This document shows, piece by piece, positions 29,232 to 64,000 of a stretch of DNA of 64,000 nt; within the stretch, counting starts at the first letter, position 1; each line of letters starts with the position of its first letter. This DNA is from Haplodiscus bocki (lineage: Eukaryota). The stretch spans positions 3,844,001-3,908,000 of the forward strand of contig OZ296651.1 in the NCBI GenBank assembly GCA_965655095.1, written 5' to 3'. Below the pieces are notes generated by a model. The model did no database searches. It was not told where the DNA came from and saw only the letters and a list, made by a program, of their open reading frames with translations. A program made the translations under genes and the position numbers.

Positions 29232-29249
29232 CCTAAAAGACGTTAAAAG

Positions 29250-29633: not shown

Positions 29634-29635
29634 TC

Positions 29636-30957: not shown

Positions 30958-30958
30958 A

Positions 30959-31528: not shown

Positions 31529-31712
31529 GCCTATCTTATTACATTGTCCTGAACTTTACCCTATCTTAATACATTGCCGAACCATACCCTATCTTAATAC
31601 ATTGGCGAACAGTATCCTATCTTAAAACATTGCCGAACTAAACCTAACTTAAAACATCGACCCGAACTATACCCTATCTTAACACATTGACCCGAACTAT
31701 ACCCTATCTCCA
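31529..31712. repeat. Terminal minisatellite, copy 3 (7 cores)
   Basis: Cores from ~31530 to 31703. Confidence 0.9.
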
Positions 31713-31857
31713 TAAATTACTGTTGACAGCCAATCAAATTCGAGTATTACGTCACCCGAGTCGTCAGCCAAACGGAACCGTCACCCGAGAGCTCTACAGC
31801 TTATCTTAATACATAGGGACCTCCAGCCCCCCCACCTGATCTGCGCACTCTTCTACT

Positions 31858-34800
31858 GCTAAAGTTGTTTATACTAAATGGTTTAAAAGAAGGTGCCCTT
31901 TTCTAGCAAGTTGATAAAATTCATGGGTCGATAAATTCAAAATGATAAAATACAAAAATTTGTTAAATCATTGCCTCATGAGACGTTTACTGTGAACATA
32001 ACAATTAAAGAGAAATCAAATTTTTTGCATGATTGCACTGCTTTAGAAAGTTTTAGTGCAATAATAAAGCTTGACATTGGAAAAGCAAACGGCATTGATG
32101 GAATTTCTTCTGAATTTTCGGAAACTTAGGCGCACGTTTCAGCCCAACTCTTTTTGGTTAAAAACAAAACTTCGTTTTCTCAAGGCAATTTCCCAGAATT
32201 CTTTAAAAATGGTACGATGACACCTATCCACTCTTCAATTGAATGTTGGAGAATTTTAATTTAATGACTAACATCGTCGTTAAGGCAAGCACTTGGGAAG
32301 AACAAAGTACCTAAGGGTAGAGAAAAAATGAGAACAAATTGTTTTCAGCATACCATGGGCTAAAATCAGTAAGTTTTAAAATCAAAAACTAAAAAAAAGC
32401 ATTCGATTTGTACAGCAACTTAGCTTCATCTACAAAAAGGTCATTTGTGATGTGTTGGCCATAGTATTTTCGATCACGAGCGCGTAAGAGAAACAACAGG
32501 TAACGAAGAATTGATCCCAGCGGAACACTGCTTTCAGAAGCGCCCCAACAAGAGATGGCCTTTCAAAGTATTAAACAATGATACCAGTTGAAACCAAATT
32601 AGCGCAACCAGTCGAGGGCAACATTTCTACTGCCGTATTGTGCTAAAGTCGTCAGTAGATGTTCCTAGTCTTTTGTATTGAATTTTTCCTAATGTCCAAC
32701 AAAAACAAAAACCAATTTTATTTTTCTCAAATCCTAATTTTTCAGTTCTATCAACAAAAGCATCAGTGGTCAAAACATTAGTTTGAAACTCGAACTGCTT
32801 TATCTACAAAAACTTTGATCCAGTAAGAAACTTTGAATGCGGTTGTACATAGATTTACCAAACATTTTACTCAAGCTGAAGCATCATAGCTAGGCCTATA
32901 ACTTTGTGGCTATGGTTTTGACCAGTTTTTTGTATGAGAGCTAACGTAGCGACTTTTGGGCAATCTGCGGAAACGCTTTAGAAAACGAAATTTTAATTTT
33001 AAGAAACAAAAGTGAAAATGAAACAAGCCCACAAGAAAGCTTCGAAAACCTTAATTGAAACTTCATCAATGCCGTTTGCGTTTCCCCTGTCAAGCAGTTT
33101 TAATGGACTAGAAAGATCTACAGTAGTGCATTCATGAATCATGCAAGAAAACTCATCTTTCTTTGGATGGTATGTTCGCAGTAAAACAACCCATGATGCA
33201 ATGTTTCAACAGATGTTTGTTTTCCAACACCTAGGGAAGAAATTATCCTTTTAAAATAGTCATCATATTTATCTCAATTTTAATTAGAAAACTTGAAAGA
33301 TTTAACAATTTTGGATAATCAGTTGGTGGTTTTCATCCACTCAGTTCTGATAAAATATAAATGTTTGAAAATGTTTGGTTCTCCTGAACTTTAAAAACTG
33401 GATGAAAAAGAGCAGCTTCTCGTCAAACCGGATAGTATAACCAAACCTATTATCATCTTTTTGTTGTGAGTCAGATCAGTCTCTTTTAGAAGAAGGAAAA
33501 CTTCATGATAAGGACTTAATCAAGTTTTGAGTTGGTTTCCGACACAAAAATCAAATCAAGATTTGTTGTTCTGCTTTTTCTCCATCTAGGAAAACTTTGT
33601 GTGTTCAACAGTTAATTGTCTGGGAAAATTAATTTAATGACTGACATCGTCGTTAAGCCAAGCACTTGGAAAAACAAAATACCTAGAGGATAGAAACAAT
33701 TTGAGAACATATTGTTTTCAGCATACCACGGGCTAATATCAGTGAGTTCTGAATTCAGAAATTAAAAAAAGTCTTGAATTTGTACAATAACCTAGCATCA
33801 TCTACGAAAACGTTAGGAGTGATGTGTTGCCGATAGTATTTCAGATCATAATCGTAAAAAAGGAACAACATAGGACAATGTATTGATCCCTATGGAACAC
33901 TGCATTCAATAGCACGCCAACAAGAGATAGCATATCAAATTATTAAACGATGATACCAGTTGAAAATATACTAGCATGAGCAGTCAAGGGTTAAACATCT
34001 CACGCCGTTTTGTCCTAAAATCATCAGTTGTTCGAAGTCTGTTGTATCAAACGTTTTCCTAAAGTCAAGCAGAAAGCCAAAACCAACCGTACTTTTTGCT
34101 ATCTTAATTTTTCAATTCTCCCAAAAAGAACCTCTGTGGTCGAAACAATAGTTTGAAACACAAACAGCCTAATCTAGAAGTTTTCTGATAGACATGAGAC
34201 ACTTCGAAGGCAGTTTTACATAGATCTCTCAAAAAAATTACGTAAAGATGAAACAACAGAGCTACGGCTATATGTTTCTGCCTATGGTTTTGATCCAGAT
34301 TTATGTGTGAGTGTTATCGTAGCAATCATAGGTCAATCTGGAAAAACGACTAAAAAGAGGAAGTTTTAATTTTAACCAGCAATGAATGAGCTCAAACGTG
34401 CGTACAAATTCTCAAAAATTGATTGAAGTTTCATCAATGCCATTGGCGTTTCCTCTGTCAAGCAGTTTGAATGGACTAGAAAGTTCTACAGTAGTGCAAT
34501 CATGAATCATGCAAGAAAACTGTTATTCCCTTAGTTGGTATGTTTGCAGTGAACGTCCCATGCGTCAAGGATTCAACAGGTTTTTTCTACTCCACGACCT
34601 ATGGAGGAGAAGTTCTTCTGGAATTTCATCACATTTTTTTGTCATTTTCCATTGGAGAACCTGAAATTTTATCAAATTTGGATAGACTGTTACTGTTTCT
34701 CATCCACTCAGTTTCGAATGATAAGAAAACGCTTGAAAAACAAAGGTTGGTTCTCATGAATCTTGTAAACTTGGTAGAAAAGGGCAGCTTCTTTTTTAAC

Positions 34801-37800
34801 CGAAAAGCATAATCATTTTTCCTTTTCAATTGTCTGCTGTCATTCAATTCAAGCTCGTTAGGGAAAAGATTACTTCACGAGAAAAACTTTATCAGTTTTT
34901 GAGTAGGCTTTCGACAAAACAGTCAAACCAAGAATTAATTTTCGATTTTTTTTCACTTTAGAAAAATTTTGCGTATTCATCAATTGTTTGTTGTAGTGAA
35001 TTCACTTAACGAATGACATCGTTGTTAAGGCAAGCACTCGGAGAAAAAAGTAAATAGAAGATAGAAACAGTTCGAAAACATAACGTTTCCCACATACCAC
35101 GGATTATTATAAGTGAGTTCCAAATTCAGAAATTGAAAGAACATTAGATTCGTACAATACCTGAGTATCATCTACAAAAAGTTTAAGTGTGATGAAACGA
35201 CGACAGTACTGCAGATCATAGGCGTATTAAAGAAACAACAGAGGACAAAGTGTTGATCCATGTTGAAAAATGCTTACAACAGCAGCCCAACAAGAAAATC
35301 CAACCCAATTAATCAAACAATGACACCAGTTGTAGGAAAAAAAGCGCAACGAGTCAAGGGCAACATTTCTAAGGCCGTAATGTCCTAAATTCGTCTGTAG
35401 ATGTTCCTAGTCTTTTGTATCGAATTCTTTCCTAATGTCAAAAAAAAACAAAAACCAAAGGTACTTTTCTCACGTCCCAAATTTTCAGTTCTCTCAACAA
35501 GAGCAACAGTGGTCCAAACATTAGTTTGAACCAGTAACTGCATAATCTACAAAATTTTTGATTTAACTAGTAAACTTTGATTGCGGTTATACATAAATCA
35601 CTCAAACTATTTATCTAAAGATGAAACAACAGAGCTCCGCCTATATTTTTCTGCCTACAGTTTTGATACGCAACTTTGTTAGGGTGTTATTGTAGCGTTT
35701 TTAGGGAAATGTGGAAAAACGACTTAGTCAGCAAAATTTCAATTTCAACCAACACAAGTTGAGTGGAAACGTGCGCACAATTTCTCAAAGTTTGGATTGA
35801 CAATTCATCAATGCCATTTGCCTTTCCACTGTCAAAGTGTTTTAATGGGCTTCAAAGTTCTACAGCAGTGAAATCTTGAACTATGCAAGAAAACTGATTT
35901 TCCCTTAGTTGGTATGTTTGCAGTAAACCTTACATGAGTCAATGGTATCATATGTTTTTGTATTCCAACACCTACGGAAGAAAAAACTTTATGAGAGGTT
36001 TAATCACAGTCTTTTTCTCTTTTTTATTTGGGAGACGTGAAGTTTTTATCACTTCTGGATAAGCAGTTGATGTTTCCCTCCATTTAATTTTGACTGGTTA
36101 TAAAAGGCTTGAAAAACAAATGTTTGTTTCTCATGAAGTTTATCAATTTGGTAGAAAACGGTAACTTCAATTAAATCAAGAAAGTATACTCGTTTGTCTT
36201 TATCAATTGTTTTTTGTCAACCAATTTAAACAAGTTAAGAGAAAAGATCACTTAAGGATGAAGTCGCTATCAGACTTTGAGTAGGTTTTTGACAAAACAA
36301 TCAAACCAAGGTTTGTTTTTGGTTTTTTAATCAATTTAGAAGAAATTGCGAATTCACCATTTCTTTGTTGGAGAATATTAAATTGAAGTTTGACATCGTC
36401 GTTTACACAGCCACTTGGAAAACAGAAAATGACTAGAAATTGAAAAAAGTTTGAAAAAAATCTATTTTCAGCAAACCAGGGGCTAATATCAACTATTTCT
36501 GAATTCACATTTAGAAGAAAAATAGATTTGTACAATAACTTAGTATCATCTTCAAAAAAGTTAGGTGTGATGTGTTGGCGATAGTACTGTAGATCATAAG
36601 CGTACGAAAGAAACAACAGAGGACCAAGTGTTGATCTTTGTGGAACAATGCATACAACAGCAGCCCAACAAGAGGATCCATCCCAATTAATCGAACAATG
36701 ACACCAGTTGTAGGAAGAAAAAGCGCAACGAGTCAAGGGCAACATTTCTTAGGCCGTAATGTCCTAAATTTGTCTGTAGATGTTCCTAGTCTTTTGTATC
36801 GAATTCTTTCCTAATGTCAAAAAAAAACAAAAACCACAGGTACTTTCCTCAAGTCCCAAATTTTTAGTTCTCTCAACAAGAGCAACAATGGTCCAAACTT
36901 TAGTTTGAACCAGTAACTGCTGAATCTATACACTTTTTGATTTAACTAGTAAACTTTGATTGCGGTTATACATAAATCACTCAACCTGTTTACCTAAAGA
37001 TGAAACAACAGAGCTCCGCCTATATTTTTCTGCCTATGGTTTTGATACGCAACTTTGTTAGGGTGTTATTCTAGCGTTTTTAGGGCAATAAGGAAAAACG
37101 AATACGAAAACGAAAAAATAATTTCAACCAACAACAGTAAACTTTGATTGCGGTTATACATAAATCACTCAAACTATTTACCTAAAGATGAAACAACAGA
37201 GCTCCGCCTATATTTTTCTGCCTACAGTTTTGATACGCAACTTTGTTAGGGTGTTATTGTAGCGTTTTTAGGGAAATGTGGAAAAACGACTTAGTCAGCG
37301 AATTTTTGATTTCAACCGACAGAAGTTGAGCGGAAACGTGCGCACAATTTCTCAAAGTTTGGATTGACAATTCATCAGTGCCATTTGCCTTTCCACTGTC
37401 AAAGTTTTTTTTGGGCTTCAAAGTTCTACGGCAATGAAATCTTGAATTACGCCAGAAAACTGATATTCCCCTAGTTAGTATAATTGCAGTAAACACAACA
37501 TGAGGCAATGATTTGACAGGATTTTGTAATCCAACACGCATGGGAGAAAAAGTTTTATGAGAAGTTTCATCACAATCTTTTTCTCTTTTTTAATTAGGAA
37601 ACCTGAGTTTTCTATCAATTCTGGATAAGAAGTTGATGGTTCCCTTTCACTCAGTTTTGACTGATATTAAAAAGTTTCATAAACAATTGTTTGTTTACCA
37701 GGAAGTTTATCACTTTGGTAGAAAAGGGCAACTTCATTAAATCGGGAAAGTATAATAATTTTTCTTTCTCAAATGTTTTTTGTCAACCAATGTAAACAGG

Positions 37801-40800
37801 CTTAGAGAGAAGATAACTTAATGATGAAGTCGCTATCATGTTTTGAGTAGGGTTTTGACTAAACAATCAACCCAAGATTTAGTTTTGGTTTGTTAATCAA
37901 TTTAGAAGATTTTGCGAAGTCATCATTTTTTTCTTGGAGAATATTAATTTAATGACTGACATCGTTGTTTACACAAGCACTTGGAAAACAGAAAATAAGT
38001 AGATGATGCAAAAAGTTTGATTAAAAACATGCTTTCAGCGAACTATGCGGTAATATCAATTGTTTCTGAATTCAGAATTAGAAGAAAAATAGATTTGTAC
38101 AAAAACTTAGAATCATCTACAAAATAGTTATGTGTGATGTGTTGACGATAGTACTGCATATCATAAACGTTTGAAAGAAACAACAGAGGACCAAGTGTTG
38201 ATCCCTGTCGAAGAATGCACACAACAGCAGCAAAACAAAAGAATCCATCCCAAATATTTAAGCAATGATACCAGTCGGAAGAAAAATAGCGTAACCAGTC
38301 AAGGGCAACATTTCTAATGCCGTATTGTGCTAAATTTGTCAGTAGATATTCCTAGTCTTTCGTATCAAATTCATTCCTAATGTCAAAAAAAACAAAAACC
38401 AACCGAACTTTTATCAAATCCGAATTTTTCAATTCTTTAACCAAGGCATCAGTGGCCGAAACAATGATTTGAAAACCCAACCGTTTACTCTATGACATTT
38501 TTGATGTGCTTGAGATATTTTGAATGCGGTTATCTCTCAAAAAATTTACCTAAAGTTCCAACAACAGAGCTAGGGCTATATGTTTCTGCCGATGGTTTTG
38601 ATCCAGATTTTTGTGTGAGTGTTATTCTAGCAATTTTAGGGCAATCCGATAAAAACGCCTCAAGAAAACGTAAATATAACAATAACCAACAAAGTTTGAG
38701 CTGAAGCGTGCGCCAAAGTTATCACTTTTCAATTGAAATTCCATCAATGTCATTTGATTTTCCACTGTAAAGCTTTTAAACTTGAATAGAAAGTTCTATA
38801 GCAGTGCAATCATGCCAGAAATTTGATCTTTCCTTAATTGGTATGTTCGCAGCAAACGTAAATTGAGACACTGAGTTAACATTTTTTTGTATTCCAACAC
38901 CTATGGAAGAGAAAGTTCTGATTAATTTTTCATGACATTCTCTTTCATTTTTATTCAGTTAACCTGAAACAAAAATTAAATTTGGTTGAGCAGTAGATCG
39001 TTCTCGTCCACTCCGTCTTGAATGATAAAAGACGTTTGAAGAACAAACTTTTGGTCCTCATGAATTTTATCAGCTTGGTAAAAAAAAAGGCTGTTTCTTT
39101 TTCAACCCAACTGCATAATCAAAGTTCTTTCTCAAATGTTTGGTGTCATTCAATTGAAGCTCAATTAGAGAAAAGACAACAGAAAGATAAAGTCTCTATC
39201 AATTTGTGAGTAGGCTTTCGACAAAACAATCCAACGAAGACTTGGTTTTCGGTTTGTTCTTCACATCAGAAAGTTTTGCGTATTCATGATTTGTTCGTTG
39301 GAGAATATTAACTTAAGGACTCACATCGTCGTTTACAAAAACACTTGGAAAAATGAAAGTAATTGGAGGATAGAAACAATTTGAAAATAAACCTGTTTTC
39401 AGCATACCAGGGGCTAATATCAGTGAGTTCTAAGTTCGAAATCTGAAAAAAAATAGATTTGTACAATAACTTAGTATCATCTACGGAAACGTTGGGTGTG
39501 ATGTGTTGACGATGGTACTCCAGATCATAAGCGTAAGGAAGAAACAACAGAAGACCAAGTGTTGGTCCCTGTGGAACAAGGTATACAACAGCAGTCCAAC
39601 AAAAGAATCCATCCCAATTAATTAAACGATGACACCAGCTGTAAGACAAAAAGCGCAGGCAAGGATTTGCAACATTTCTGAAGCCGTATTGTGTTAAAAT
39701 CGTGAGTACATGCTCCTAGTCTTTTCTATCGAATTCGTTCCTAATGTCAAGAAGAAAGTTGAAACCAACCATCCTTTTTGCAAACCCTATTTTTTCAGTT
39801 CTATAACAAGGGAATCAGTCTCCGAAACAATGATATGAAACCCGAAAAGCTTACTCTATGAATTTTTTGATATGCTTGAGAAATTTTGATTTCGGTTATA
39901 CATAGATCTCCAAAAAAACTTACCTGAGGTCGAAACAACGAAGCTAAAGCTAAATGTTTCTGCCTATGGTTTTTGGTCCAAAGTTTTGTGTAAGTGTTAT
40001 CGTAGCAACTTTAGGGCAATCCGGAAATTCGTCTCAGGGAAACGAAAAATTAATATTTCTCAACAAAGTTTGAGGTGAAACTTGCGCTGAAGTTTTCAAG
40101 TTTTCATTTGAAACTCCGTCAATGACATTTGATTTTTCACTGTCAAGCTTTTCAAATTTTGAGTGGAAAGTTCTTCAGCAGTGGAATTATGCCAGAAATC
40201 CCATCTTTTCCTAATTGGTATGTTCGCAGCAAACGTAAACTGAGACACTGATTTAACAGGTTTTTCTATTCCTGTTTGAAAACTATGGAAAAGAAAACTC
40301 TATGAGAAGTTTCATCACAGTCTTTTTTTCTTTTTTAATTAAGAAACCTGAAGTTTTTATCACTTCTGGATAAGCAGTTGATGGTTCTCGTCCACTCCGT
40401 CCTGAATGATAACAAAACGTTTGAAGAACAAACGTTTGGTTCTCATGAAATTATTTATCAGCTTGGTAAAAAAACGCAGTTTCTCTCTAAACCGAATTGA
40501 AAAACCAATTTTTTTTCTCAAATGTTTGGTGTCATTCAATTGAAGCTCATTTAGAGAAAAGACAACAGAAAGATAAAGTCTCTATCAATTTGTGAGTAGG
40601 CTTTCGACAAAACAATCCAACGAAGACTTGGTTTTCGGTTTGTTCTTCACTTCAGAAAGTTTTGCGTATTCATGATTTGTTCGTTGGAGAATATTAACTT
40701 AAGGACTCACATCGTCGTTTACAAAAACATTTGGAAAAATGAAAGTAACTGGAGGATAGAAACAATTTGAAAACAAACCTGTTTTCAGCATACCAGGGGC

Positions 40801-49800: not shown

Positions 49801-52800
49801 TTCACAGTAAACGTTCATGAGGCAAATGTTTAACAGAATTCAGAGTTTTCAATTTCAGTAACTGTGAAAGAAAAAGTTCTATTGAAAAATTCAGCACAGT
49901 TTCTTTCATTTTCAGTATGAGAAATTGAGATGTTTGTCAATTTCTGGTTAGCAGTTGATGGGTTTCGTCCACTCAGTATTGAATGATAAAGAAACGTTTG
50001 AAAAACGAAGTTTTGTTCCAATGAACTTTATTAACATGCTAGAAAAGGGCGACTTCTTTTTCAGCGGAACAGTGAAATCAACTTCTTTTCTCACTTTTTT
50101 GTTAATATTCAATTTACGCACACTTAAAGCAAGTATAACCTAACGATGCGGAAATGACCAAATTTTGAGAAGCCTTTCAACAAAATCATCGAAACAAAAA
50201 TTGTTTTCCTGTTACTTCTCCAGTTCAGCAAATCTTGTCTATTCATAATTTTTGTGTTAGAGAAATTCAACTCAAGGACTGACATCATCGTTAACACAAC
50301 CACTTGGGAAAAAAAACAACAAAAGGTAGAAACATTTCCAAAACAAATTGTTTTCAGCATACCATGGATTAATATCTGTGAGACTGTCATTCAGAAAGCG
50401 CAAAAAAACAAAGATTCTTACAATACCCTAGTACCATCTGCAAAAGTTTAGGCATGATGTGATGACAATAATATTGCAGATCATACCCGTATTAAAGAAA
50501 CACCAGAGGACGAAATTATGATCCCTGTGGAACACTGCATACAATAGCGACCAAAAAAGAAAATGCAACCTAAAAGTTTACAAGATGGTACCAGCTGGGA
50601 TTAAATTATCGCAACCAATCAAATGCAACATTTCTGGTGCCGTATTCTACTAATTACATCAGTAGTGGTTCGTAGTCTAGCCCTTTGAATGCTTCTCTAA
50701 AGTCAAGAAGAAAGCAAAAACCAACCGTACTTTTTTTCCAGTCCTATCAACAAGAGCATCAGTGGTCGAAACATTAGTTCGGAAAGCGAACTGATTATTC
50801 TATAGAACTTTTGATCTATATAGGACGCTTTGAATGCGGTTTTACATACAACTCTCAAAACTTTCACTTGAAGGTGAAACAACAGGAAACGCCTATCACT
50901 TTCTGTCTACAGTTTTGATCGAGAATTTAGTATGGGTGTTATCGTAGCGATTTTAGGGCAATAAGGAAAAACGACTAAGAAAACGAAAAAATAATTTCAA
51001 CCAACAACAGTAAACTTTGATTGCGGTTTTACATAAATCACTCAAACTATTTACCTAAAAATGAAACAACAGAGCTCCGCCTATATTTTTCTGCCTATGG
51101 TTTTGATACGCAACTTTGTTAGGGTGTTATTGTAGCGTTTTTAGGGAAATGTGGAAAAACGACTTAGTCAGCGAAATTTCAATTTCAACCAACACAATTT
51201 GAGCGGAAACGTGCGCACAATTTCTCATAGTTTGGATTGACAATTCATCAATGCCATTTGCCTTTTCACTGTCAAAGTTTTTTTGGGCTTCAAAGTTCTA
51301 CGGCAACGAAATCTTGGATTACGCCAGAAAACTGATATTCCCTTAGTTAGTATAATTGCAGTAAACACAACATGAAGCATTGATTTGACAGGTTTTTGTA
51401 TTCCAACACGTTTGGAAGAATAAGTTCTATGAGAAATTTCAACACAGTCTTTTTTCTTTTTTAATTAGGAAACCTGAGATTTTTATCAATCCTGGATCAG
51501 CAGTTGATGGTTCCCTTCCAGTAAGTTTTGACTGATATTAAACGTTTGATAAACAATTGTTTGTTTCTCATGAAGTTTTTCAATTTGGTACAAAAGGGCA
51601 ACTTCTTTTAAATCGGGATAAAATATTCACTTTTCCTTCTCAAATGTTTTTTGTCAACCAAATGAAGCTCGTTTAGAGAAAGGAAAACTCAACGATAAAT
51701 TCTCCATCAATTTTTGAGTAGTCTTTTGAAAAAACAAAGAAAACAAGAAATGGTTTTCGGTTTGTTCTTCACTTTAGAAAGTTTTGCGGACTCATCTAAA
51801 ACTTGTTGGAGTATATTAACTTAATGACTGACATCGTCGTTAAGGCAAGCACTCGGAAAAAATAAAGTAACTTGAAGATGGGAACAGTTTGAAAACAAAA
51901 AGTTTTCAGCATACCATAGGTTAATATCAGTGAGTTCCAAATTCAGAAAATAAAGAATTATTAGATTCGTACGTTGGCTTTATATCGTCTTGAGAAACGT
52001 TAAATGTGTTGCATCGACAATAGTACTGCAGATCGTAAGCGTATTGAAGAAACAACAGGGAACGAAGTTTTGATACCTGTGGAACACTACATTCAATAGC
52101 ACCCCAACAGGAGATAGCATAATCAAATATTAAACGACGACAGCAGTTGGAAAAATTTCAACGGAAGAAAACAGCGGCTGCAGTTCTAATGCCGTTTTCC
52201 GTTAAATTCATCAGCAGTTGCACCTAGTCTTTTATATCGAAAGCTTTCCTTATGTCGAAAAAAAACCAACCCTTTTTTTTCAAATTATAGTTTTTCAGTT
52301 CTCTCAACAAGAGCATCGGTGGTCCGTTTTTTTTCTGAAACGCTAACTGCTTGCTTAATCTACAAACTTTTTGATCTATTTAGGAAACTTTGAATGCGGT
52401 TATAGACTGGTCTATCAATTTACCCACCTAAAGATGAAACAACAAAGATAGGCTTATATGTTTCTGCCTATGGTTTCGATCCAACTTTAGGTTTTAACGC
52501 AGTTTGAAAAAACGCCTCAGGAAATCAAACAATTAATGTCAACCAACAAAGTTTGAGATGAAACGTGCGCTAAAGTTTTCAAATGTTCAATTGAAAATTC
52601 ATCATTGCCATTTGACTTTCCACTGTCAAGCTTCTTTAATGGACCACAAAATTCTACAGCAGTGCAATCATGCAAGAAAACTGACCTCTCTTGTTTTGGT
52701 ATGTTCACAGTAAACGTTCATGAGGCAAAAATTTAACAGAATTCAGAGTTTTCAATTTCAGCAAATGTGAAAGAAAAAATTTTATTGAAAAATTCAGCAC

Positions 52801-55800
52801 AGTTTCCTTCAATTTCAGTATGAAAAACCGAGATGTTTGTCAATTTCTGATTGGCAGCTGATGGTTTTTGTCCACTCAGTATTGAAAGATAAAGAAACGT
52901 TTGAGAAACGAAGTTTTGTTCCCATGAACTTTATTAACTTGCTAGAAAAGGGCGGCTTTCTTTCAGCGGAAGAGTGAAATCAACTTCTTTTCTCACTTTT
53001 TTGTTAATATTCATTTTACGCACACTTAAAGCAAGTATAACCTAACGATGCGGAAATGACCAAATTTTGAGAAGCCTTTCAACAAAATCATCAAAACAAA
53101 AATTGTTTTCCTGTTACTTCTCCAGTTCAGCAAATCTTGTCTTTTCATCATTTTTGTGTTAGAGAAATTCAACTCAAGGACTGACATCATCGTTAACACA
53201 ACCACTTGGGAAAAAAGCAACAAAAAGATAGAAACATTTCCAAAACAAAGTGTTTTCAGCATACCATGCATTATTATCTGTGAGATTGTCATTCAGAAGG
53301 CGCAAAAAAACTTAGATTCCTACAATACCTTAGTATCATCTGCAAAAGCTTAGGCATGATGTGTTGACGATAATATTGCAGATCATAACTGTTATAAAGA
53401 AACACCAGAGGACGAAATATTGATCCCTGTGGGGCACTGCGTACAATAGCAACCTAAAACGAAAATGCAACCTAAAAGTTCACACGATGGTACCAACTGG
53501 GATTATATTAGCCGAACCAGTCAAAAATAACAATACTAATGCCGTATTGTGTTAATTACATCAGTAGTGGTTCGTAGTCTAGCCTATTGAATGCTTCTCT
53601 AAAGTCAAGAAGAAAGCAAAAACCAGCCGTACTTCTTGCAAATCTTAATTTTCCAGTTCTATCAACAAGAACAACAGTGGTTGAAGCATTAGTTCGGAAA
53701 CCGAACTGCTTAATCTATAAAATTTTTGATCTATATAGGACACTATAAATGCGGTTTTACATACAGCTCTCAAAGTTTTCACTTGAAGACGAAACAACAG
53801 AGCAAGGCCTATCACTTTCTGCCTATGGTTTTGATCAAGAATATTGTATGGGTGTTATCGTAGTGGTTTTAGAGCAATAAGGAAAAACAACACTAGGAAA
53901 CGAAATTTCTAATTTCAACCAAGAAAGTTTGAGCTGAAACGTTCGCAAAAGTTCTCAAAACTTTGATTGACAATCCATCAATGCCATTTGCGTTTCCACT
54001 GTCAAAGTTTTTTTTTGGGCTGGAAAGTTCTACAGCAATGAAATGATGAATTAAGCAAGAAAACTGATATTCTCTTAGTTGGAATTTTTGCAGTAAACAC
54101 AACAAGAAGCAATGATTTAACAGGTTTTGTATTCCAACACCTATGGAAGAAAACGTTCTATGAGAATTTTCATCACAGTCTTTTGTTCTTTGTTAATTAG
54201 GAAACCTGAAGTTTTTATCACTTCTGGATAAGCAGTTGATGGTTCTCGTCCACTCCGTCTTGAATGATAACAAAACGTTTGAAGAACAAACGTTTGGTTT
54301 TCATGAAATTATTCATCAGCTTGGTAAAAAAACGCAGTTTCTCTCTAAAGCGAATTGAAAAACCAAATTTTTTTCCTCAAATGTTTGGTGTCATTCAATT
54401 TAAGCTTTAGAGGCAAGAAAACATAACGATAAAGTCTCTATCATTTCTTGAGTAGGCTTTTGACAAAAAAATGAAACCATGGAATGTTTTTCGTTTTGTT
54501 CTTCACTTTAGAAAGTTTTGCGGACTCATCAAATACTTGTTGGAGTATACTAACTTAATGACTGACATCGTCGTTAAGACAGGCATTCGGAAAAAAAAGA
54601 AGTAACTTGAAGATGGGAACAGTTTGAAAACAAAAAGTTTTCAGCAAACCTTAGGTTATTATCAGTGAGTTACAAATTCAGAATTTAAAAAAAATATTAG
54701 ATTCGTACATTGGCTTAGTATCGTCTTGAGAAACGTTAAGTGTGATGTATCGACAATAGTACTGCAGATCGTAAGCGTATGAAAGAAACAACAGGAAACG
54801 AAGTTTTGATACCTGTGGAACACTACATTCAAAAGCACCCCAACAAGAGATAGCATAATCAAATAATAAACGATGACAGCAGTTAGAAAAACTTCAGCAC
54901 AACTAAACGGCGGCAACATTTCTAATGCCGTTTTTGCGTTAAATTCATCAGCAGTTGTTCCTAGTTTCTTATAACAAATGCTTTCCTCATGTCAAAAAAA
55001 CCAACCGTTTTCTTTTCAAATTTTATTTTTTCAATTCTCTCAAAAGAGCATCGGTGGTCCGAACTTTTTTTTGAAACTCTAACTGCCTAATCTATAAAAA
55101 TTTTGATCTATTTAGGAAACTTTGAATGCGGTTAAAGATTGGTCTATCATATTACCCATCTAAAGATGAAACAGCAAAGCTAGGCTTGTATGTTTCTGCC
55201 TATGGTTTCGATCCAAATTTAAGTTTTAGCGCAGTTTGGAAAAAAGGCTAAGAAAATCAAAAATTTAGTTTTACCCAACAAAATCTGAGCTGAAAAGTGC
55301 GCTAAAGCTTTCAAATGTTCAGTTGAAATCTCATCAAAGCCATTTGGCTTTCCACTGTCCGGCTTCTTTATTTGAATAGAAATTTCTACAACAGTGCAAT
55401 CACGCTAGAAGACTGATACTCTTAGAATGCTATATTCGGATTAAACGTTCCTTGAGGCAAGTGTTTAACAGATTTCAAAATTTGAGTTTCAGCATCTGTG
55501 GAAGAAAAAGTTTTATTAAAAAATTCACCACAGTTTTTTTCATCCTTACTTTGAAAAACTGAGATGTTTGTCAATTTCGGACAAGCAGTTGATGATTTTC
55601 GTCCACTCAGTATTGAATGATAAACAAACGTTTGAAAAATATAGGTATGTTCCCTATGAACTTTTAAAAATGCTAGAAAGCGGCAGCTTCAATTCAAGCC
55701 GAACAGTGAAACCAACTACCTTTCTCACTTTTTTGTTATGATTCAATATAGGCTCAGTTAATGAAAGAATATCTTAATGATGCTGAATCGATCAATTTTG

Positions 55801-58800
55801 GAGAAGCCCTCCAACAAAATCATCAAACCAAAATTTGCTTTCCCGTTATTTCTCCAGTTCACCAAATCTTGTCTATTCATCATTTTTGTGTTAGAGAAAT
55901 TCAACTCAAGGACTGACATCATCGTTAACACAACCGCTTGGGAAAAAAATAGCAACAAAAGGTAGAAACATTTCCAAAACAAAATGATTTCAGCATAATT
56001 TGAGTTGATATCTGTGAGATCTTCATCCAGATAGCGCAAAAAAACTTAGATTCCTACAATAACTTAGTACCATCTGCAAAAGTTTACGCATGATGTGATG
56101 ACAAAAATATTGCAGATCATACCCGTAATAAAGAAACACCAGAGGACAAAAATTTGATCCCTGTGGAACACTGCATACAATAGCGACCAAAAAAGAAAAT
56201 GCAACCTAAAAGTTTACACGATCGTACCAGCTGGGATTATATTATCGCAACCAATCAAAGGCAATATTTCTAATGCCGTATTCTGCTAATTACATCAGTG
56301 TTGGTTCGTAGTCTAGCCAATTGAATGCTTCTCTAAAGTCAAGAAGAAAGCAAAAACCAACCGTACCTTTGCAGATCTTTTTTTCCAGTTATATCAACAA
56401 GAGCATCAGTGGTCGAAACATTAGTTCGGAAACCGAACTGATTAATCTATAGAATATTTGATCTATATAGGACGCTTTGAATGCGGTTTTACATACAACT
56501 CTCAAACTTTTCACTTGAAGATGAAACAACAGAGCAACGCCTCTCACTTTCAGTCTACTGTTTTGATCGAGAATTTTGTATGGGTGTTATCGTAGCGGTT
56601 TTAGGGCAATAAGGAAAAACGACTAAGAAAACGAAAAAATAATTTCAACCAACAACAGTAAATTTTGATTGCGGTTTTAAATAAATCACTCAAACTATTT
56701 ACCTAAAGATGAAACGACAGAGCTCCGCCTATATTTATCTGCCCATGGTTTTGATACGCAACTTTATTAGGGTGTTTTTGTAGCGTTTTTGGGGAAATGT
56801 GGAAAAACGACTTTGTCAGCGAAATTTCAATTTCAACCAACACAAGTTGAGGGGAAACGCGCGCACAATTTCTCAAAGTTTGGATTGACATTTCATCAAT
56901 GCCAACTGCCTTTCCACTGTCAAAGATTTTTTTGGGCTGCAAAGTCCTACGGCAATGAAATCTTGAATTACGCCAGAAAACTGATATTCCCTTAGTTAGT
57001 ATAGTTGCAGTAAACACAACATGAGGCATTGATTTCACAGGTTTTTGTATTCCAACAGGTTTGGAAGAATAAGTTCGATGAGAAATTTCATCACAGTCTT
57101 TTTTTCTTTTTTAATTAGGAAACTTGAGATTTTTATCAATCCTGGATAAGCAGTTGATGGTTCCCTTCCAGTAAGTTTTGACTGATATTAAACGTTTGAA
57201 AAACAGTTGTTTGTTCCTCATGAAGTTTTTCAATTTGGTATAAAAGGGCAACTTCTTTTAAATCGGGATAATATAATCACTTTTCCTTCTCAAATGTTTG
57301 TTGTCAACCAAATTAAGCTCGTTTAGAGAAAGGAAAACTCAACAATAAATTCTCCATCAATTTTTGAGTAGGCTTTTGACAAAACAATGAAACCAAGGAA
57401 TGTTTTTCGGTGTGTTCTTCACTTTAGAAAGTTTTGCGGACTCATCTAATACTTGTTGGAGTATATTAACTTAATGACTGACATCGTCGTTAAGGCAAGC
57501 ACTCGGAAAAAATAAAGTAACTTGAAGGTGGGAACAGTTTGAAAACAAAAAGTTTTCAGCATACCATAGGTTAATATCAGTGAGTTCCAAATTCAGAAAT
57601 TAAAAAATTATTAGATTCGTACATTGGCTTTATATCGTCTTGAGAAACGTTAAATGTGTTGCATCGACAATAGTACTGCAGATCGTAAGCGTATTGAAGA
57701 AACAACAGGGAACGAAGTTTTGATACCTGTGGAACACTACATTCAATAGCACCCCAACAAGAGAAAGCAGAATCAAATATTAAACGACGACAGCAGTTGG
57801 AAAAATTTCAACGGAACTAAACAGCGGCAGCAGTTCTAATGCCCTTTCGCGTTAAATTCATCAGCAGTTGCACCTAGTCTTTCATATCGAAAGCTTTCCT
57901 TATGTTGAAAAAAAACCAACCCTTTTCTTTTAAAATTATAGTTTTTCAGTTCTCTCAACAAGAGCATCGGTGGTCCATTTTTTGTCTGAAACGCTAACTG
58001 CTTGCTTAATCTACAAACTTTGATACATTTAGCAAACTTTGAATGCAGCTATAGATTGGTCTACCAATTTACCCACCTAAAGATGAAACAACAAAGATAG
58101 GCTTATATGTTTCCGCCTATGGTTTCGATCCAACTTTAAGTTTTAAAGCAGTTTGAAAAAACGCCTTAAGAAATCAAACAATTAATGTCAACCAACAGAG
58201 TTTGAGATGAAACGTGCGCTAAAGTTTTCAAATAATCAATTGAAAATTCATCATTGCCATTTGACTTTCCACTGTCAAGCTTCTTTAAGGGACCACAAAG
58301 TTCTACAGCAGTGCAATCATGCAAGAAAACTGACCTCTCTTGTTTTGGTATGTTCACAGTAAACGTTCATAGAGGCAAAAATTTAACAGAATTCAGAGTT
58401 TTCAATTCCAGCAACTGTGAAAGAAGAAGTTCTATTGAAAAATTCAGCACAGTTTCTTTCATTTTCAGTATGAAAAACTGAGATGTTTATCAATTTCTGA
58501 TTAGCAGTTGATGGTTTTCGTCCACTCAGTATTGAATTATAAAGAAACGTTTGAAAAACGAAGTTTTGTTCCCATGAACTTTATTAACTTGCTAGAAAAA
58601 GGCGGCTTCTTTTTCGGCCGGAACAGTGAAATCAACTTCTTTTCTCACTTTTTTGTTAAAATTCATTTTACGCACACTTAAAGCAAGTATAACCTAACGA
58701 TGCGGAAATGACCAAATTTTGAGAAGCCTTTCAACAAAATCATTAAAACAAAAATTGTTTTCCTGTTACTTCTCCAGTTCAGCAAGTCTTGTCTATTCAT

Positions 58801-61800
58801 CATTTTTGTGTTAGAGAAATTCAACTCAAGGACTGACATCATCGTTAACACAACCACTTGGGAAAGAAAGCAACAAAAAGATAGAAACCTTTCCAAAACA
58901 AAATGTTTCCAGCATAACATGCATTATTATCTGTGAGATTGTCATTCAGAAGGCGCAAAAAAACTTAGATTCCTACAAAACCTTAGTATCATCTGCAAAA
59001 GCTTAGGCATGATGTGTTGACGATAAAATTGCAGATCATAACTGTTATAAAGAAACACCAGAGGACGAAATATTGATCCCTGTGGGGCACTGCGTACAAT
59101 AGCAACCTAAAACAAAAATGCAACCTAAAAGTTCACACGATGGTACCAGCTGGGATTTTCTTAGCCGAACCAGTCAAAAATAACAATTCTAATGCCGTAT
59201 TGTGTTTATTACATCAGTAGTGGTTCGTAGTCTAGCCTATTGAATGCTTCTCTAAAGTCATGAAGAAAGCAAAAACCAGCCGTACTTCTTGCAAATCTTA
59301 ATTTTCCAGTTCTATCAACAAGAACATCAGTGGTTGAAGCATTAGTTCGGAAATCGAACTGCTTAATCTATAAAATTTTTGATCTATATAGGACACTATG
59401 AATGCGGTTTTACATACAGCTCTCAAAGTTTTCACTTGAAGACGAAACAACAGAGCAAGGGCTATCACTTTCTGCCTATGGTTTTGATCAAGAATTTTGT
59501 ATGGGTGTTATCGTAGTGGTTTTAGAGCAATAAGGAAAAACGACACTAGGAAACGAAATTTCTAATTTCAACCAAGAAAGTTTGAGCTGAAACGTTCGCA
59601 AAAGTTCTCAAAACTTTGATTGACAATCCATCAATGCCATTTGCGTTTCCACTGTCAATGTTTTGTTTTGGGCTGGAAAGTTCTACAGCAATAAAATGAT
59701 GAATTATGCAAGAAAATTGATATTCTCTTAGTTGGAATTTTTGCAGTAAACACAACAAAAGGCAATGATTTAACAGGTTTTTGTTTTCCGACACCTATGG
59801 AAGAAAAAGTTCTATGAGAATTTTCATCACAGTCTTTTGTTCTTTGTTAATTAGGAAACCCGAAATTTTTATCAATCCTGGATAAGCAGTTGATGGTTCC
59901 CTTCCAGTAAGCTTTGACTGATATTAAACGTTTGAGAAACAATTGTTTGTTTCTCATGAAGGTTTTCAATTTGGTAGAAAAGGGCAACTTCTTTTAAATC
60001 GGGATAAAAAAATCACTTTTCCTTCTCAAATGTTTGTTGTCAACCAAATTAAGCTCGTTTAGAGAAACGAAAACTCAACGATAAATTCTCCATCAACTTT
60101 TGAGTAGGCTTTTGACAAAACAATGAAACCAAGGAATGTTTTTCGGTTTGTTCTTCACTTTAGAAAGTTTTGCGGACTCATCAAATACTTGTTGGAGTAT
60201 ATTAACGTAATGACTGACATCGTCGTTAAGGCAAGCACTCGGAAAAAATAACGTAACTTGAAGATCGGAACAGTTTGAAAACAAAAAGTTTTCAGCATAC
60301 CGTAGGTTAATATCAGTGAGTTCCAAATTCAGAAATTAAAAAATTTATTAGACTCGTACGTTGGTTCAGTATCGTCTTGAGAAACGTTAAGTGTGATGTA
60401 TCGACAATAGTACTGCAGATCGTAAGCGTATTAAAGAAACAACAGGGAACGAAGTTTTGATACCTGTGGAACACTACATTCAATAGCACCCCAACAAGAG
60501 ATAGCATAATGAAATATTAAACTACGACAGCAGTTGGAAATATTTCAACGGAACTAAACAGCGGCAGCAATTCTAATGCCGTTTTGCGTTAAACTCATCA
60601 GTAGTTGTTCCTATTCTTTCATATCGAAAGCTTTCCTAATGTCAAAAAAAACCAACCCTTTTGTTTTCAAATTATAGTTTTTCAGTTCTCTCAACAAGAG
60701 CATCGGTGGTCCATTTTTTGTCTGAAACGCTAACTGCTTGCTTAATCTACAATTTTTTTGACCTATTTAGGAAACTTTGAATGCGGTTATAGATTGGTCT
60801 ATCAATTTACCCACCTAAAGATGAAACAACAAAGCTAGGCTTATATGTTTCTGCCTATGGTTTCGATCCAACTTTAAGTTTCAACGCACTTTGTAAAAAC
60901 GCCTTAGGAAATCAAACAATTAATGTCAACCAACAGAGTTTGAGATGAAACGTGCGCTAAAGTTTTCAAATGTTCAATTGAAAATTCATCATTGCCATTT
61001 GACTTTCCACTGTCAAGCTTCTTTAATGGACCACAAAATTCTACAGCAGTGCAATCATGCAAGAAAACTGACCTCTCTTGTTTTGGTATGTTCACAGTAA
61101 ACGTTCATGAGGCAAATATTTAACAGAATTCAGAGTTTTCAATTTCAGCAACTGTGAAGGAAAAAGTTCTATTGAAAAATTCAGCACAGTTTCCTTCATT
61201 TTCGGCATGAAAAACTGAGATTTTTGTCAATTTCTGATTAGCAGTTGATAGTTTTCGTCCACTCAGTATTGAAAGATAAAGAAACGTTTGAAAATTGAAG
61301 ATTTGTTCCCATGAACCTTATTAACTTGCAAGAAAAGGGCGGCTTCTTTTTCAGCGGAACAGTGAAATCAACTTCTTTTCTCACTTTTTTGTTAATACTC
61401 AATTTACGCACACTTAAAGCAAGTATAACCTAACGATGTGGAAATGACCAAATTTTGAGAAGCCTTTCAACAAAATCATCAAAACAAAAATTGTTTTCCT
61501 GTTACTTCTCCAGTTCAGCAAATCTTGTCTATTCATCATTTTTGTGTTAGAGAAATTCAACTCAAGGACTGACATCATCGTTAACACAACCACTTGGGAA
61601 AAAAAGCAACAAAAAGGTAAAAACATTTCCAAAACAAAATGTTTTCAGCACACCATGCATTTTTATCTGTGAGATTGTCATTCAGAAAGCGCAAAAAAAC
61701 TTAGAGTCCTACAATACATTAGTATCATCTGCAAAAGCTTAGCCATGATGTGTTGACGATAATTTTGCAAATCATAACTGTAATAAAGAAAAAACAGAGG

Positions 61801-64000
61801 ACGAAATATTGATCCCTGTGGAACACTGCATACAATAGCAACCAAAAACGAAAATTCAACCTAAGAGTTTACACGATGGTACCAGCTGGGATTTTCTTAG
61901 CCGAACCAGTCAAATAAAACAATTCTAATGCTTTACTGTGTTAATTACATCAGTATTGGTTCGTAGTCTAGCCAGTTGAATGCTTCTCTAAAGTCAAGAA
62001 GAAAGCAAAAACCAACCGTATTTCTTGCAAATCTTAATTTTCCAGTTCTATCCACAAGAACATCAGTGGTTGAAGCATTAGTTGGGAAACCGAACTGCTT
62101 AATCTATAAAAATTTTCATCTATACAGGACACTATGAATGATTTTTATATACAACTCCCAAAGTTTTCACTTGAAGACGAAACAACAGAGCAATGGCTAT
62201 CACTTTTTGCCTATGGTTTTGATCAAGTTTTTTGTATGGGTGTTATCGTAGTGGCTTTAGAGCAATAAAGAAAAACGACACCAGGAAACGAAAGTTCTAA
62301 TTTCAACCTAGAAAAATTGAGCTGAAATGTTCGCAAAAGCTCTCAAAGCTTTGATTGACAATCCATCAATGTCATTTGCGTTTCCACTGTCAAAGTTTTT
62401 TTCGGGCTGGAAAGTTCTACAGCAATGAAATGATGAATTATGCAAGAAAACTGATATTCTCTTAGTTGGAATTGTTGCAGTAAACTCAACAAGAGGCATG
62501 GATTTAACAGCTTTTTGTATTCCAACACCTATGGAAGAAAAAGTTCTATGAGAATTTTCATCACAGTCTTTTTTTCTTTTTTAATTTCGAAACCTGAAAC
62601 TTTTATCAATTCTGTATCAGCAGTTGATGGTTCCCTTCCACTCAGTTTTGACTGAGACTAAAACGTTTGAAAATTAATTGTTTGTTTCTCATGAAGTTTA
62701 TCAACTTGATAGAAAAGGGCAACTTCTTTTAAATCGGGATAAAATATTCACTTTTCCTTCTCAAATGTTTGTTGTCAACCAAATTAAGCTCGTTTAGAGA
62801 AAGGAAAACTCAACGATAAAGTCTCCATCGACTTTTGAGTAGGTTTTTGACAAAACAATGAAACCATGGATTGTTTTTCGGTTTGTTCTTCACTTTAGAA
62901 AGTTTTGCGAACTCATGAAATACTTGTTGGAGTATATTAACTTAATGACTGACATCGTCGTTAAGGCAAGCACTCGGAAAAAATAACGTAACTTGAAGAT
63001 CGGAACAGTTTCAAAACAAAAAGTTTTCAGCATGCCGTAGGTTAATATCAGTGAGTTCCAAAATCAGAAATTAAAAAAATTATTAGACTCGTACGTTGGC
63101 TTAGTATCGTCTTTAGAAACGTTAAGTGTGATGTATCGACAATAGTACTGCAGACCGTAAGCGTATTAAAGAAACAACAGGGAACGAAGTTTTGATACCT
63201 GTGGAACACTACATTCAATAGCACCCCAACAAGAGAAAGCATAATCAAATATTAAACCACGACAACAGCTGGAAAAATTTCAACGGAACTAAACAGCGGC
63301 AGCAATTCTAATGCCGTTTTGCGTTAAACTCATCAGTAGTTGTTCCTATTCTTTCATATCGAAAGCTTTCCTAATGTCAAAAAAAACCAACCCTTTTGTT
63401 TTCAAATTATAGTTTTTCAGTTCTCTCAACAAGAGCATCGGTGGTCCATTTTTTGTCTGAAACGCTAACTGCTTGCTTAATCTACAATTTTCTTGACCTA
63501 TTTAGGAAACTTTGAATGCGGTTATAGATTGGTCTATCAATTTACCCACCTAAAGATGAAACAACAAAGCTAGGCTTATATGTTTCTGCCTCTAGTTTCG
63601 ATCCAACTTTAACTTTTAACGCAGTTTGGAAATCAAACAATAATGATTAACCAACAAAGTTTGAGACGAAACTTGCGCTAAAGATTTCAAATGTTCAATT
63701 GAAAATTCATCAATGCCATTTGACTTTCCACTGTCAAGCTCCTTTATTGGACGAGAAAATTCTACAGCAGTGCAATCATGCAAGCAAACTGGTCTCTCTT
63801 GTTTTTTATGTTCACAGTAAACGTTCATGAGGCAAATATTTAAGAGAATTCAGAGTTTCGAATTTCAGCAACTGTAAAAGAAAAAGTTCTATTGAAAAAA
63901 TCAGCACAGTTTTCTTCATTTTCAGTATGTAAAACAGAGATGTTTGTCAATTTCCAATTAGCAGTTGATGGTTTTCGTCCACTCAGTAATGAAGGATAAA
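31858..64000 (-). repeat. Macrosatellite of ~23 head-to-tail ~1.35-1.39-kb monomers derived from the RT region of a non-LTR retrotransposon (CR1/L2/Jockey-like ORF2); all degenerate
   Basis: Landmark GACATC(G/A)TCGTT at ~32267, 33641, 35014, 36391, 37955, 39320, 40706, 42090, 43445, 44818, 46197, 47545, 48922, 50278, 51826, 53180, 54560, 55911, 57476, 58831, 60211, 61567, 62947. Minus-strand remnants: KLDSGKANGID, YRP.SV, QFGF, LD..KAFD, VPQGS.LGPLLF..Y..DL, F(A/V)DDTKL, LGLI. The first ~380 bp are inverted. Confidence 0.93.

What the first reader, a model, noticed from the sequence alone, without database searches (positions are those of the whole stretch)
31858..64000. Macrosatellite built from just the reverse-transcriptase core of a LINE
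Seen: at least 23 same-orientation, gap-free monomers of ~1.37 kb. Each runs from the EN-RT linker through RT domain 7 (LGLI) and rejoins the linker of the next, with no endonuclease, ORF1, 3' UTR, tail or TSD visible. Neighbouring monomers are strongly diverged yet length is held at ~1350-1390 bp. Established: retrotransposed LINE copies keep their 3' ends, so an internal fragment in tandem must have amplified at the DNA level (rolling circle or unequal exchange). Inference: an old TE-derived satellite, possibly centromeric/heterochromatic, or a strand-uniform source of anti-LINE piRNAs covering the most conserved LINE region.
Basis: partly seen in the sequence, partly recalled or inferred. 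Interest (0 to 1): 0.75.

Follow-up and report, generated by a model that had tools for sequence, protein, structure and literature searches.

The report
Single-locus tandem array from dead LINE
A 1.37-kb inner piece of one long-dead jumping gene (a LINE) was copied head-to-tail about 25 times at one spot in this probable coral genome and has since decayed as junk DNA, which is a clean but ordinary way for a repeat array to arise.

Summary
From window 32,245 to 66,896 (2.9 kb past the window end) lie about 25 head-to-tail units of 1,336-1,388 bp. Three units are about 1,560 bp because they share an internal duplication.

Each unit is an inner piece of LINE ORF2, encoded on the minus strand. 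It runs from about 40 aa after the endonuclease domain to about 30 aa before the end of the RT domain, and it is full of stops.

All units share one junction with no tail or target-site duplication. They form one clade, and their sister is a fragment outside the window (-4,345 to -2,121). That fragment holds the LINE's own 3' end, a deleted first unit, a true unit junction and a further unit. So the array grew in place on one LINE copy.

An 18.1-kb Maverick/Polinton-like element later split the array. Then 8 kb of that junction was triplicated (window 10,642-34,596), and blocks of two and four units were re-copied.

Diversity is equal at the three codon positions. There is no conserved box, CpG content matches the flanks, and the array exists at this locus only. 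No RNA data exist.

The centromere and piRNA ideas have no support. The scan has already reported several similar arrays elsewhere in this genome.

The parts
32245..64000 (-). Main tandem array of LINE-ORF2-derived units. It starts with a partial unit, then full units begin at 32321, 33692, 35063, 36444, 38010, 39372, 40758, 42146, 43497, 44870, 46250, 47597, 48979, 50328, 51883, 53230, 54618, 55964, 57533, 58883, 60269, 61621 and 63004. It continues outside the window to 66,896. The RT sense is the minus strand.
   Evidence: RT homology
39372..40757 (-). One unit in its natural phase ('rot' 1-1374), from the parental left breakpoint to the right breakpoint. It equals about aa 683 back to aa 242 of a reference ORF2.
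44870..64000 (-). Younger part of the array. Type A units (about 1,380 bp) alternate with type B units (about 1,350 bp). Dimers (2.73 kb) and a four-unit block of about 5.65 kb were re-copied at 83-92% identity.
36948..37289 (.). 174-188-bp internal duplication (rot 510-683) in unit m04. The same boundaries recur in m14 (50,828-51,194) and m18 (56,476-56,842).
31862..32230 (+). Inverted copy of the array sequence that lies left of the Maverick insertion. It is LINE-derived, rot 899 to 620 in the opposite orientation, and 82% identical to -2,628..-2,351. Copies of it lie at 15,960-16,328 and 23,894-24,262.
1..15959 (+). Maverick/Polinton-like element inserted into the array. The whole element spans -2,120 to 15,959 (18.1 kb). 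It has terminal inverted repeats of about 1 kb that carry a 30-bp minisatellite (15,567-15,806).
10642..34596 (.). Three tandem copies of an 8-kb segment, 97-98% identical. Each copy holds the last 5.3 kb of the Maverick-like element, the inverted flank copy and 1.7 array units.
16343..18694 (-). 1.7 array units inside 8-kb copy 1. The same piece lies at 24,277-26,628 in copy 2, and 32,245-34,596 is its counterpart in copy 3.

Best explanation
This is a single-locus macrosatellite that grew in place on one copy of an old, now extinct, endonuclease-type LINE family. The steps below are marked as shown or inferred.

1. **Insertion (shown).** One LINE copy inserted on the minus strand. Its 3' terminus survives at about window -4,345.
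2. **First duplication (shown that it happened; mechanism inferred).** Very early in that copy's history, a 1,374-bp inner stretch of ORF2 was duplicated head-to-tail. The stretch runs from just after the endonuclease domain to just before the end of the RT domain. The join lies in a short imperfect microhomology (TAAYTT). The cause may have been replication slippage or microhomology-mediated repair, or possibly a template jump by the reverse transcriptase during insertion.
3. **Growth (inferred from pattern).** Unequal exchange or slippage between units enlarged the array.
4. **Decay (shown).** The units then decayed neutrally to about 26% mean pairwise difference.
5. **Later events (shown).**
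   - An 18.1-kb Maverick/Polinton-like element inserted into the second unit, with an inverted copy of its left flank at its right end.
   - Blocks of two and four units were re-copied in the right half of the array.
   - One unit was duplicated (96% identity).
   - An 8-kb piece spanning the Maverick/array junction was triplicated (97-98% identity).

No present function is indicated. I read the array as neutral DNA.
For: - **One origin.** All 27 units, including the two in the 8-kb copies, form one clade (support 97/95). The off-window left-edge fragment is their sister, separated from 7 dispersed family copies with 100/100 support.
- **Attached to its source.**
  - Region -3,527..-3,391 runs colinear with dispersed copies across the left breakpoint, from the ORF2 C-terminal side into unit positions 1-118.
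  - Region -3,339..-3,100 spans a true unit-to-unit junction.
  - The fragment ends at the 3' terminus shared by all seven family copies examined.
- **Internal LINE fragment.** Dispersed copies continue on both sides of the unit, into EN on one side and into the RT C-terminus and tail on the other.
- **One junction.** The same junction, with microhomology, is present in every unit.
- **Neutral decay.**
  - Diversity at codon positions 1/2/3 is 0.245/0.269/0.261.
  - Stops occur in every unit.
  - There is no convincing conserved window: permutation p = 0.22, 0.015 and 0.7 for 20, 30 and 50 bp.
  - CpG observed/expected is 0.82, against 0.66-0.86 in the surroundings.
- **Single locus.** Genome searches with a unit and with a dispersed copy find the array only here. 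Elsewhere they find single dispersed copies at 66-76% identity.
- **Early start.** The stem of the unit clade is 0.025, against tip depths of about 0.21-0.25 and 0.23 for the left-edge copy.
- **The interrupting element.** It is colinear with two 18.8-kb copies that have 1-kb terminal inverted repeats and 6-bp target-site duplications.
Against: - The right edge is not parental. The array stops abruptly at unit position 1,177 against 1.36 kb of unique DNA. No LINE 5' part lies within 27 kb. So a later deletion, or a 5'-truncated insertion that already carried the duplication, must be assumed.
- No target-site duplication of the parent copy could be recognised.
- The microhomology is read from sequences that are about 30% decayed.
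- Function cannot be excluded without RNA and chromatin data, and none was available.
- The LINE clade was not determined.
- The assembly of the repeats was not verified with spanning long reads. The four runs laid down gave only short contigs.
Confidence: 0.85

Rival explanations
1. The first duplication was made during retrotransposition itself. The reverse transcriptase jumped back on its RNA template, or a master copy already carried the duplication. The insertion was then a 5'-truncated LINE that already held 1.86 or more units, and DNA-level exchange only enlarged it later.
For: - The array ends at unit position 1,177 directly against unique DNA, as a 5'-truncated insertion would.
- The LINE's 3' end is intact at the other side.
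- The deepest split among units is almost as old as the split from the left-edge copy.
- The junction has microhomology, which is also typical of template switching.
Against: - No target-site duplication flanks the whole structure, although its age makes this inconclusive.
- No dispersed copy of the family shows the duplication, so a duplicated master is unlikely.
- The locus has suffered several other rearrangements, so a deletion at the right edge is not far-fetched.
Confidence: 0.25
2. The fragment was excised as a circle, amplified by rolling-circle replication, and reintegrated as a ready-made array.
For: A single uniform junction occurs in all units. The right edge abuts unrelated unique DNA.
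Against: - The left edge is colinear with the parental LINE's own C-terminal region and 3' terminus. A reintegrated array would not show this unless it landed back in its source.
- The edge unit is the most divergent and the inner units are layered, as expected for in-place unequal exchange.
Confidence: 0.05
3. The array has a present function, either as a centromeric or heterochromatin-forming satellite or as a one-stranded piRNA source against LINEs.
For: All units lie in one orientation. The array has persisted for a long time. TE-rich surroundings such as Mavericks and old repeats resemble piRNA-cluster territory.
Against: - It is a single 35-kb locus, 3.9 Mb from a chromosome end.
- Diversity is neutral and position-independent, and there is no convincing conserved box.
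- CpG content matches the flanks.
- The target family is extinct and shares only 0.25% of its 20-mers with the array.
- The nearest living LINEs are about 36% identical at the protein level over a 165-aa piece.
- No RNA run holds the array.
Confidence: 0.05
4. Serial independent LINE insertions side by side, or an assembly artefact that inflates a short repeat.
For: None for serial insertion. For an artefact: the repeats are hard to assemble, and the available runs gave only short contigs.
Against: - No tails, 3' UTRs or target-site duplications lie at the joins, and the junction is identical everywhere.
- The units differ from each other by 4-33%, so they are distinct sequences that an assembler cannot invent by collapsing or expanding.
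- Contigs from four runs (two samples) cover every 190-bp bin of a 5.6-kb stretch at 95% identity or more.
Confidence: 0.02

Closest known systems
Satellites derived from LINE ORF2: PROsat of Phodopus roborovskii (L1 ORF2), Pvc20 of harbour seal (L1 ORF2), and chicken HinfI/SCR1 (CR1 partial ORF2 plus 3' UTR), as listed in PMC9659126
   Same: The tandem repeat unit is a piece of a LINE coding region. It was amplified as DNA, not by retrotransposition, and it is non-coding after decay.
   Different: Here the array is a single 35-kb locus rather than a genome-wide satellite. The unit is long (1.37 kb, nearly the whole RT core). The array is still joined to the parental copy's 3' end, so its birth can be read directly.
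Other in-place LINE-fragment arrays already reported by this scan in the same genome (s1-359328, s1-359373, s1-382584, s1-354063, s1-376407)
   Same: Same genome and same kind of object: kb-sized inner or terminal LINE pieces copied tens of times at one spot, with layered block duplications, judged neutral.
   Different: This array comes from a different LINE family. Neither a unit nor a dispersed family copy finds another array. It is split by a Maverick/Polinton-like insertion, and its edge has been triplicated. I did not compare unit boundaries between the arrays.
Tandem TE dimers as seeds of satellites (McGurk and Barbash 2018, PMC5932611) and satellites arising from tandem repeats inside retrotransposons (Vondrak et al. 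2020, PMC7004042)
   Same: A small initial tandem duplication of TE sequence is enlarged by unequal exchange into an array.
   Different: The seed here is not a double insertion of whole elements, since the joins carry no termini. It is also not a pre-existing repeat in a UTR. It is a duplication of a coding segment inside one copy.
Primate alpha-satellite-type higher-order repeat organisation
   Same: Old divergent units lie at the edge. Younger blocks of two and four units were re-copied in the interior.
   Different: No centromere association, no multi-chromosome distribution, no conserved protein-binding box, and a unit eight times longer.

Membership tests
TE-derived tandem array (macrosatellite born from an internal TE fragment) | Head-to-tail copies in one orientation with one and the same junction | tested here: met
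TE-derived tandem array (macrosatellite born from an internal TE fragment) | The unit is homologous to an internal part of a dispersed TE family whose copies continue on both sides of the unit | tested here: met
TE-derived tandem array (macrosatellite born from an internal TE fragment) | No TE termini or target-site duplications at the joins, which rules out serial insertion | tested here: met
Classical satellite DNA | High genomic abundance, with long arrays at many sites or in blocks of heterochromatin | tested here: not met
   One locus of about 35 kb, plus two 2.35-kb pieces in the 8-kb copies
Endonuclease-type LINE (parent family) | RT domain with conserved motifs, colinear with the ORF2 of intact LINEs | tested here: met
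   A Pfam RVT_1 hit on single stop-free pieces was only marginal (E = 0.051).
Endonuclease-type LINE (parent family) | Apurinic-type endonuclease domain upstream of the RT in family copies | tested here: met
   tblastn hits to EN aa 5-68, 107-192 and 113-207 in dispersed copies L014 and L011.
Endonuclease-type LINE (parent family) | Common 3' terminus with variable 5' truncation among copies | tested here: met
   Seven copies end at the same terminus. The copies differ in their 5' extent.
Endonuclease-type LINE (parent family) | Assignment to a named clade (CR1, L2, RTE and so on) | not tested
   No reference set was at hand, and all family copies are degenerate.
Centromeric satellite | Presence at the centromere of one or more chromosomes, with CENP-A binding | not testable with these tools
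   The position, 3.9 Mb from the end of a 121-Mb chromosome, and the single 35-kb size argue against it. No ChIP data were available.
piRNA cluster | Produces abundant 24-31-nt RNAs | not testable with these tools
   No RNA run holds the stretch.
piRNA cluster | Sequence complementarity to active elements | tested here: not met
   The family has no intact copy. Only 21 of 8,506 20-mers from dispersed copies are shared.
Maverick/Polinton (the interrupting element) | Length of 15-20 kb, long terminal inverted repeats and a 6-bp target-site duplication | tested here: met
   Two family copies are 18.8 kb, with terminal inverted repeats of about 1 kb and target-site duplications TACAAA and GTTACA. 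The window copy is 18.1 kb but lacks a target-site duplication.
Maverick/Polinton (the interrupting element) | Retroviral-type integrase, protein-primed DNA polymerase B, packaging ATPase, capsid and protease genes | tested here: inconclusive
   - rve integrase: E = 2e-8.
- Pox_A32 ATPase: E = 1e-4, just under the cut-off.
- The 828-aa ORF resembles DNA_pol_B_2 only by language-model features and has no Pfam hit.
- Capsid and protease were not sought.

The most novel reading that the evidence does not exclude
This array may be one product of a lineage-specific, still active process that turns arbitrary kb-sized pieces of transposons and endogenous viruses into 25-75-kb single-locus arrays.

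- The scan holds about 95 'macrosatellite' notes for this genome.
- A 99.8-99.9% identical 3 x 1.41-kb array of Maverick-related sequence lies only 15-19 kb upstream of this window.

In this case the process may have started at or right after LINE insertion, for example by polymerase template switching. If so, the genome would be a natural system for watching satellite birth at every stage.
Probability: 0.15. Interest if true: 0.6.

Novelty: new member of a known kind. Interest (0 to 1): 0.25.

Why it matters
The locus preserves, in readable form, every stage of how a transposon fragment becomes a tandem array:
- the parental 3' end;
- the first junction with its microhomology;
- old edge units and younger multi-unit blocks;
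- a later mobile-element insertion;
- a very recent 8-kb triplication.

That makes it a good teaching case and a calibration point for satellite-birth models. It does not change what is known, because ORF2-derived satellites and in-place TE-derived arrays are already described, including in this same genome. The broader question is why this genome holds so many such arrays. That question may be worth a systematic study.

Tried and rejected
- **Pfam on window ORF pieces.** ORF pieces of the 8-kb unit and of the first 10 kb gave nothing. Stop-free pieces of the units gave only a marginal RVT_1 hit. RT identity therefore rests on tblastn with this genome's own intact ORF2s and on the dispersed family copies.
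- **Intact parent.** None was found. All family copies are degenerate.
- **LINE 5' part to the right of the array.** None lies within 27 kb. The same-family copy at +88.4-90.3 kb groups with the dispersed copies, not with the array.
- **Target-site duplication of the parent insertion.** Not significant.
- **Hidden similarity past the right edge.** None.
- **Conserved box.** None is convincing.
- **Residual codon-position bias.** None among the units, nor among the dispersed copies, so that planned positive control was uninformative.
- **Rfam.** No match in the window.
- **RNA evidence.** No run on record as RNA holds the array. The four holders are of unknown kind and gave only short contigs, so they say nothing about expression, strand or array length.
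- **Other LINE arrays.** A search for the other 1.38-kb LINE arrays noted by the scan, to compare unit boundaries, found no locus with my queries.
- **Consensus sequences.** I built no consensus of the LINE or of the Maverick-like element. All comparisons use natural copies.
Full report
**Setting.** The window is G000:C4:3,844,001-3,908,000 of a 1.5-Gb eukaryotic assembly with about 12 large chromosomes. Earlier scan notes call it a coral. C4 is 121 Mb long, so the locus lies 3.9 Mb from one chromosome end.

**Observation.**
- Self-BLAST gives a dominant tandem period of about 1.37 kb from about 32.2 kb to the window end.
- Mapping one unit back on the window and its flanks places full units at regular starts from 32,321 to 65,722. 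The array begins with a partial unit at 32,245 and ends at 66,896, which is 2.9 kb beyond the window.
- Unit lengths are 1,336-1,388 bp. Three units of 1,555-1,569 bp share one 174-188-bp internal duplication with the same boundaries.
- Mean pairwise identity is 74%, with a range of 67-96%.

**What the unit is.**
- Intact 923-aa ORF2 proteins from this genome (EN aa 22-200, RVT_1 aa 478-715) hit the units on the minus strand at aa 467-680, with E down to 1e-9.
- The motifs YRP, FGF, LLDxxKAFD, VPQGSxLGPLLFL and xxDD are readable and are interrupted by stops.
- Pfam on single stop-free pieces is only marginal.
- A genome search with one unit finds single dispersed copies at 66-73% identity on many chromosomes. 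A dispersed copy finds at least 239 first-look candidates at 68-76% identity.
- Six of these copies were fetched. They run colinear through the whole unit and continue on both sides. One side leads into endonuclease-homologous sequence, and the other into the RT C-terminal part and a 3' end shared by all.
- All family copies are degenerate. The nearest living LINEs are about 36% identical in a 165-aa piece. The clade was not determined.

**The junction.** Aligning the unit joins with both parental breakpoints, taken from dispersed copies and from the parent copy itself, shows one and the same join in every unit. There is no tail, filler or target-site duplication. The crossover lies in a short imperfect microhomology, TAAYTT.

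**Origin in place.** Outside the window, at -4,345 to -2,121, lies a fragment in the same orientation. It consists of:
- the family's 3' terminus and C-terminal ORF2 region, running without a break into unit positions 1-118;
- a 52-bp gap;
- unit positions 1,314-1,374;
- a true unit-to-unit junction at -3,267;
- a further unit up to position 1,141.

In a maximum-likelihood tree all units form one clade (97/95). This left-edge unit is their sister, separated from seven dispersed copies with 100/100 support. The array is thus still attached to the 3' part of the very LINE copy it grew from.

The stem of the unit clade is short (0.025) compared with tip depths (about 0.21-0.25) and with the left-edge branch (0.23). 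So the first duplications happened early in the copy's history.

**Right edge.**
- The array stops at unit position 1,177 against 1.36 kb of unique DNA followed by old repeats.
- No LINE 5' part lies within 27 kb. A same-family copy at +88.4-90.3 kb is an independent insertion.
- No target-site duplication was detectable.
- Either a deletion removed the right edge, or the insertion was 5'-truncated and already carried the duplication through a reverse-transcriptase template jump. I put about 0.25 on the second reading. Both lead to the same later history.

**Later history.**
- The tree and block identities show two unit types. Old, diverse units sit on the left (m01-m09). A/B dimers and a four-unit block of about 5.65 kb were re-copied on the right at 83-92% identity. 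One unit pair is 96% identical.
- The gap between the left edge and the main array is an 18.1-kb element (-2,120 to 15,959). It is colinear at 80-86% identity with two 18.8-kb copies elsewhere. Those copies have terminal inverted repeats of about 1 kb, containing a 30-bp minisatellite, and 6-bp target-site duplications.
- Family copies of that element encode an rve integrase (E = 2e-8) and an A32-like ATPase (E = 1e-4). They also encode an 828-aa protein whose language-model features resemble protein-primed polymerase B. I call it Maverick/Polinton-like.
- The window copy has no target-site duplication. Its right end is followed by an inverted copy of its own left flank (15,960-16,328). This indicates a repair event that copied the left end and flank.
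- Finally, an 8-kb piece spanning the element's last 5.3 kb, the inverted flank and 1.7 units was triplicated at 97-98% identity (10,642-34,596).

**Tests for function.**
- Diversity among units is the same at the three codon positions (0.245/0.269/0.261), so the units decayed without coding constraint.
- A sliding-window scan finds no convincing conserved box. Permutation p is 0.22, 0.015 and 0.7 for 20, 30 and 50 bp, uncorrected.
- CpG observed/expected is 0.82, within the range of the flanks and of dispersed copies.
- Only 21 of 8,506 20-mers and 3 of 8,478 24-mers from seven dispersed copies occur in the array. Small RNAs from the array would therefore match almost nothing, and the family is dead anyway.
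- Rfam finds nothing.
- No RNA run holds the stretch. Four runs of unknown kind, from two samples of one study, cover it with short contigs at 95% identity or more. This shows only that the sequence exists in reads of the organism.

**Comparison with what is known.**
- LINE ORF2-derived satellites are on record: PROsat, Pvc20 and chicken HinfI/CR1 (PMC9659126).
- Growth of arrays from small TE tandem seeds is an established model (PMC5932611, PMC7004042, PMC12628747).
- The scan has already followed up several in-place LINE-fragment arrays in this same genome (s1-359328, s1-359373, s1-382584, s1-354063, s1-376407) and judged them ordinary. This one comes from a different family, since my searches found no other array of it.
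- It fails the abundance criterion of a classical satellite. It is best filed as a single-locus macrosatellite of TE origin.

**Verdict.**
- The DNA-level amplification reading is supported and sharpened: the array grew in place and is still joined to the parent's tail.
- The centromere and piRNA readings are unsupported.
- Novelty: a new member of a known kind.
- Interest is low to moderate. The main value is as an unusually complete record of array birth, and as one more data point for the open question of why this genome makes so many kb-unit arrays.

Noticed in passing
window 1-15959 (whole element -2120..15959; family copies L029+L030+L028 and L031+L032+L026): An 18-19-kb Maverick/Polinton-like element family with terminal inverted repeats of about 1 kb, which carry a 30-bp minisatellite, and 6-bp target-site duplications. 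Family copies encode an rve integrase, an A32-like ATPase, a C2H2 zinc-finger ORF and a probable protein-primed polymerase. The first look gave more than 14,000 candidates in the genome.
   Followed up: partly
window 15960-16328 versus -2628..-2121 (L010 7372-7879): The window's Maverick-like copy has no target-site duplication. Its right terminus is followed by an inverted copy of the sequence left of its left terminus, 82% identical and with about 140 bp missing. This suggests break repair that copied the left end and flank.
   Followed up: partly
L019 985-5216 (window -19016..-14785; C4:3,824,985-3,829,216): A very young tandem repeat, 3 x 1.41 kb at 99.8-99.9% identity. Part of each unit matches the Maverick-like element (window 14,288-14,853). 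It abuts a second, inverted copy of that element at -15,351..-9,352.
   Followed up: no
window 36948-37289, 50828-51194, 56476-56842: Three units carry an internal duplication with identical boundaries (unit positions 510-683). The two copies are 94% alike in m04 but only 75-77% alike in m14 and m18, and m04 does not group with m14/m18 in the tree. This points to either gene conversion or a recurrent event.
   Followed up: partly
G000:C2:147,396,345-147,443,511: Four RT-homologous hits with an open 208-aa frame, spaced exactly 15.6 kb apart. This may be another large-unit tandem array.
   Followed up: no
L017 (window 82342-82541): A 200-N assembly gap lies 15 kb to the right of the array. It was left untouched.
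   Followed up: no
L018 411-2348 (window 88411-90348): An independent 3' fragment of the same old LINE family, in the same orientation as the array. In the tree it groups with the dispersed copies.
   Followed up: yes
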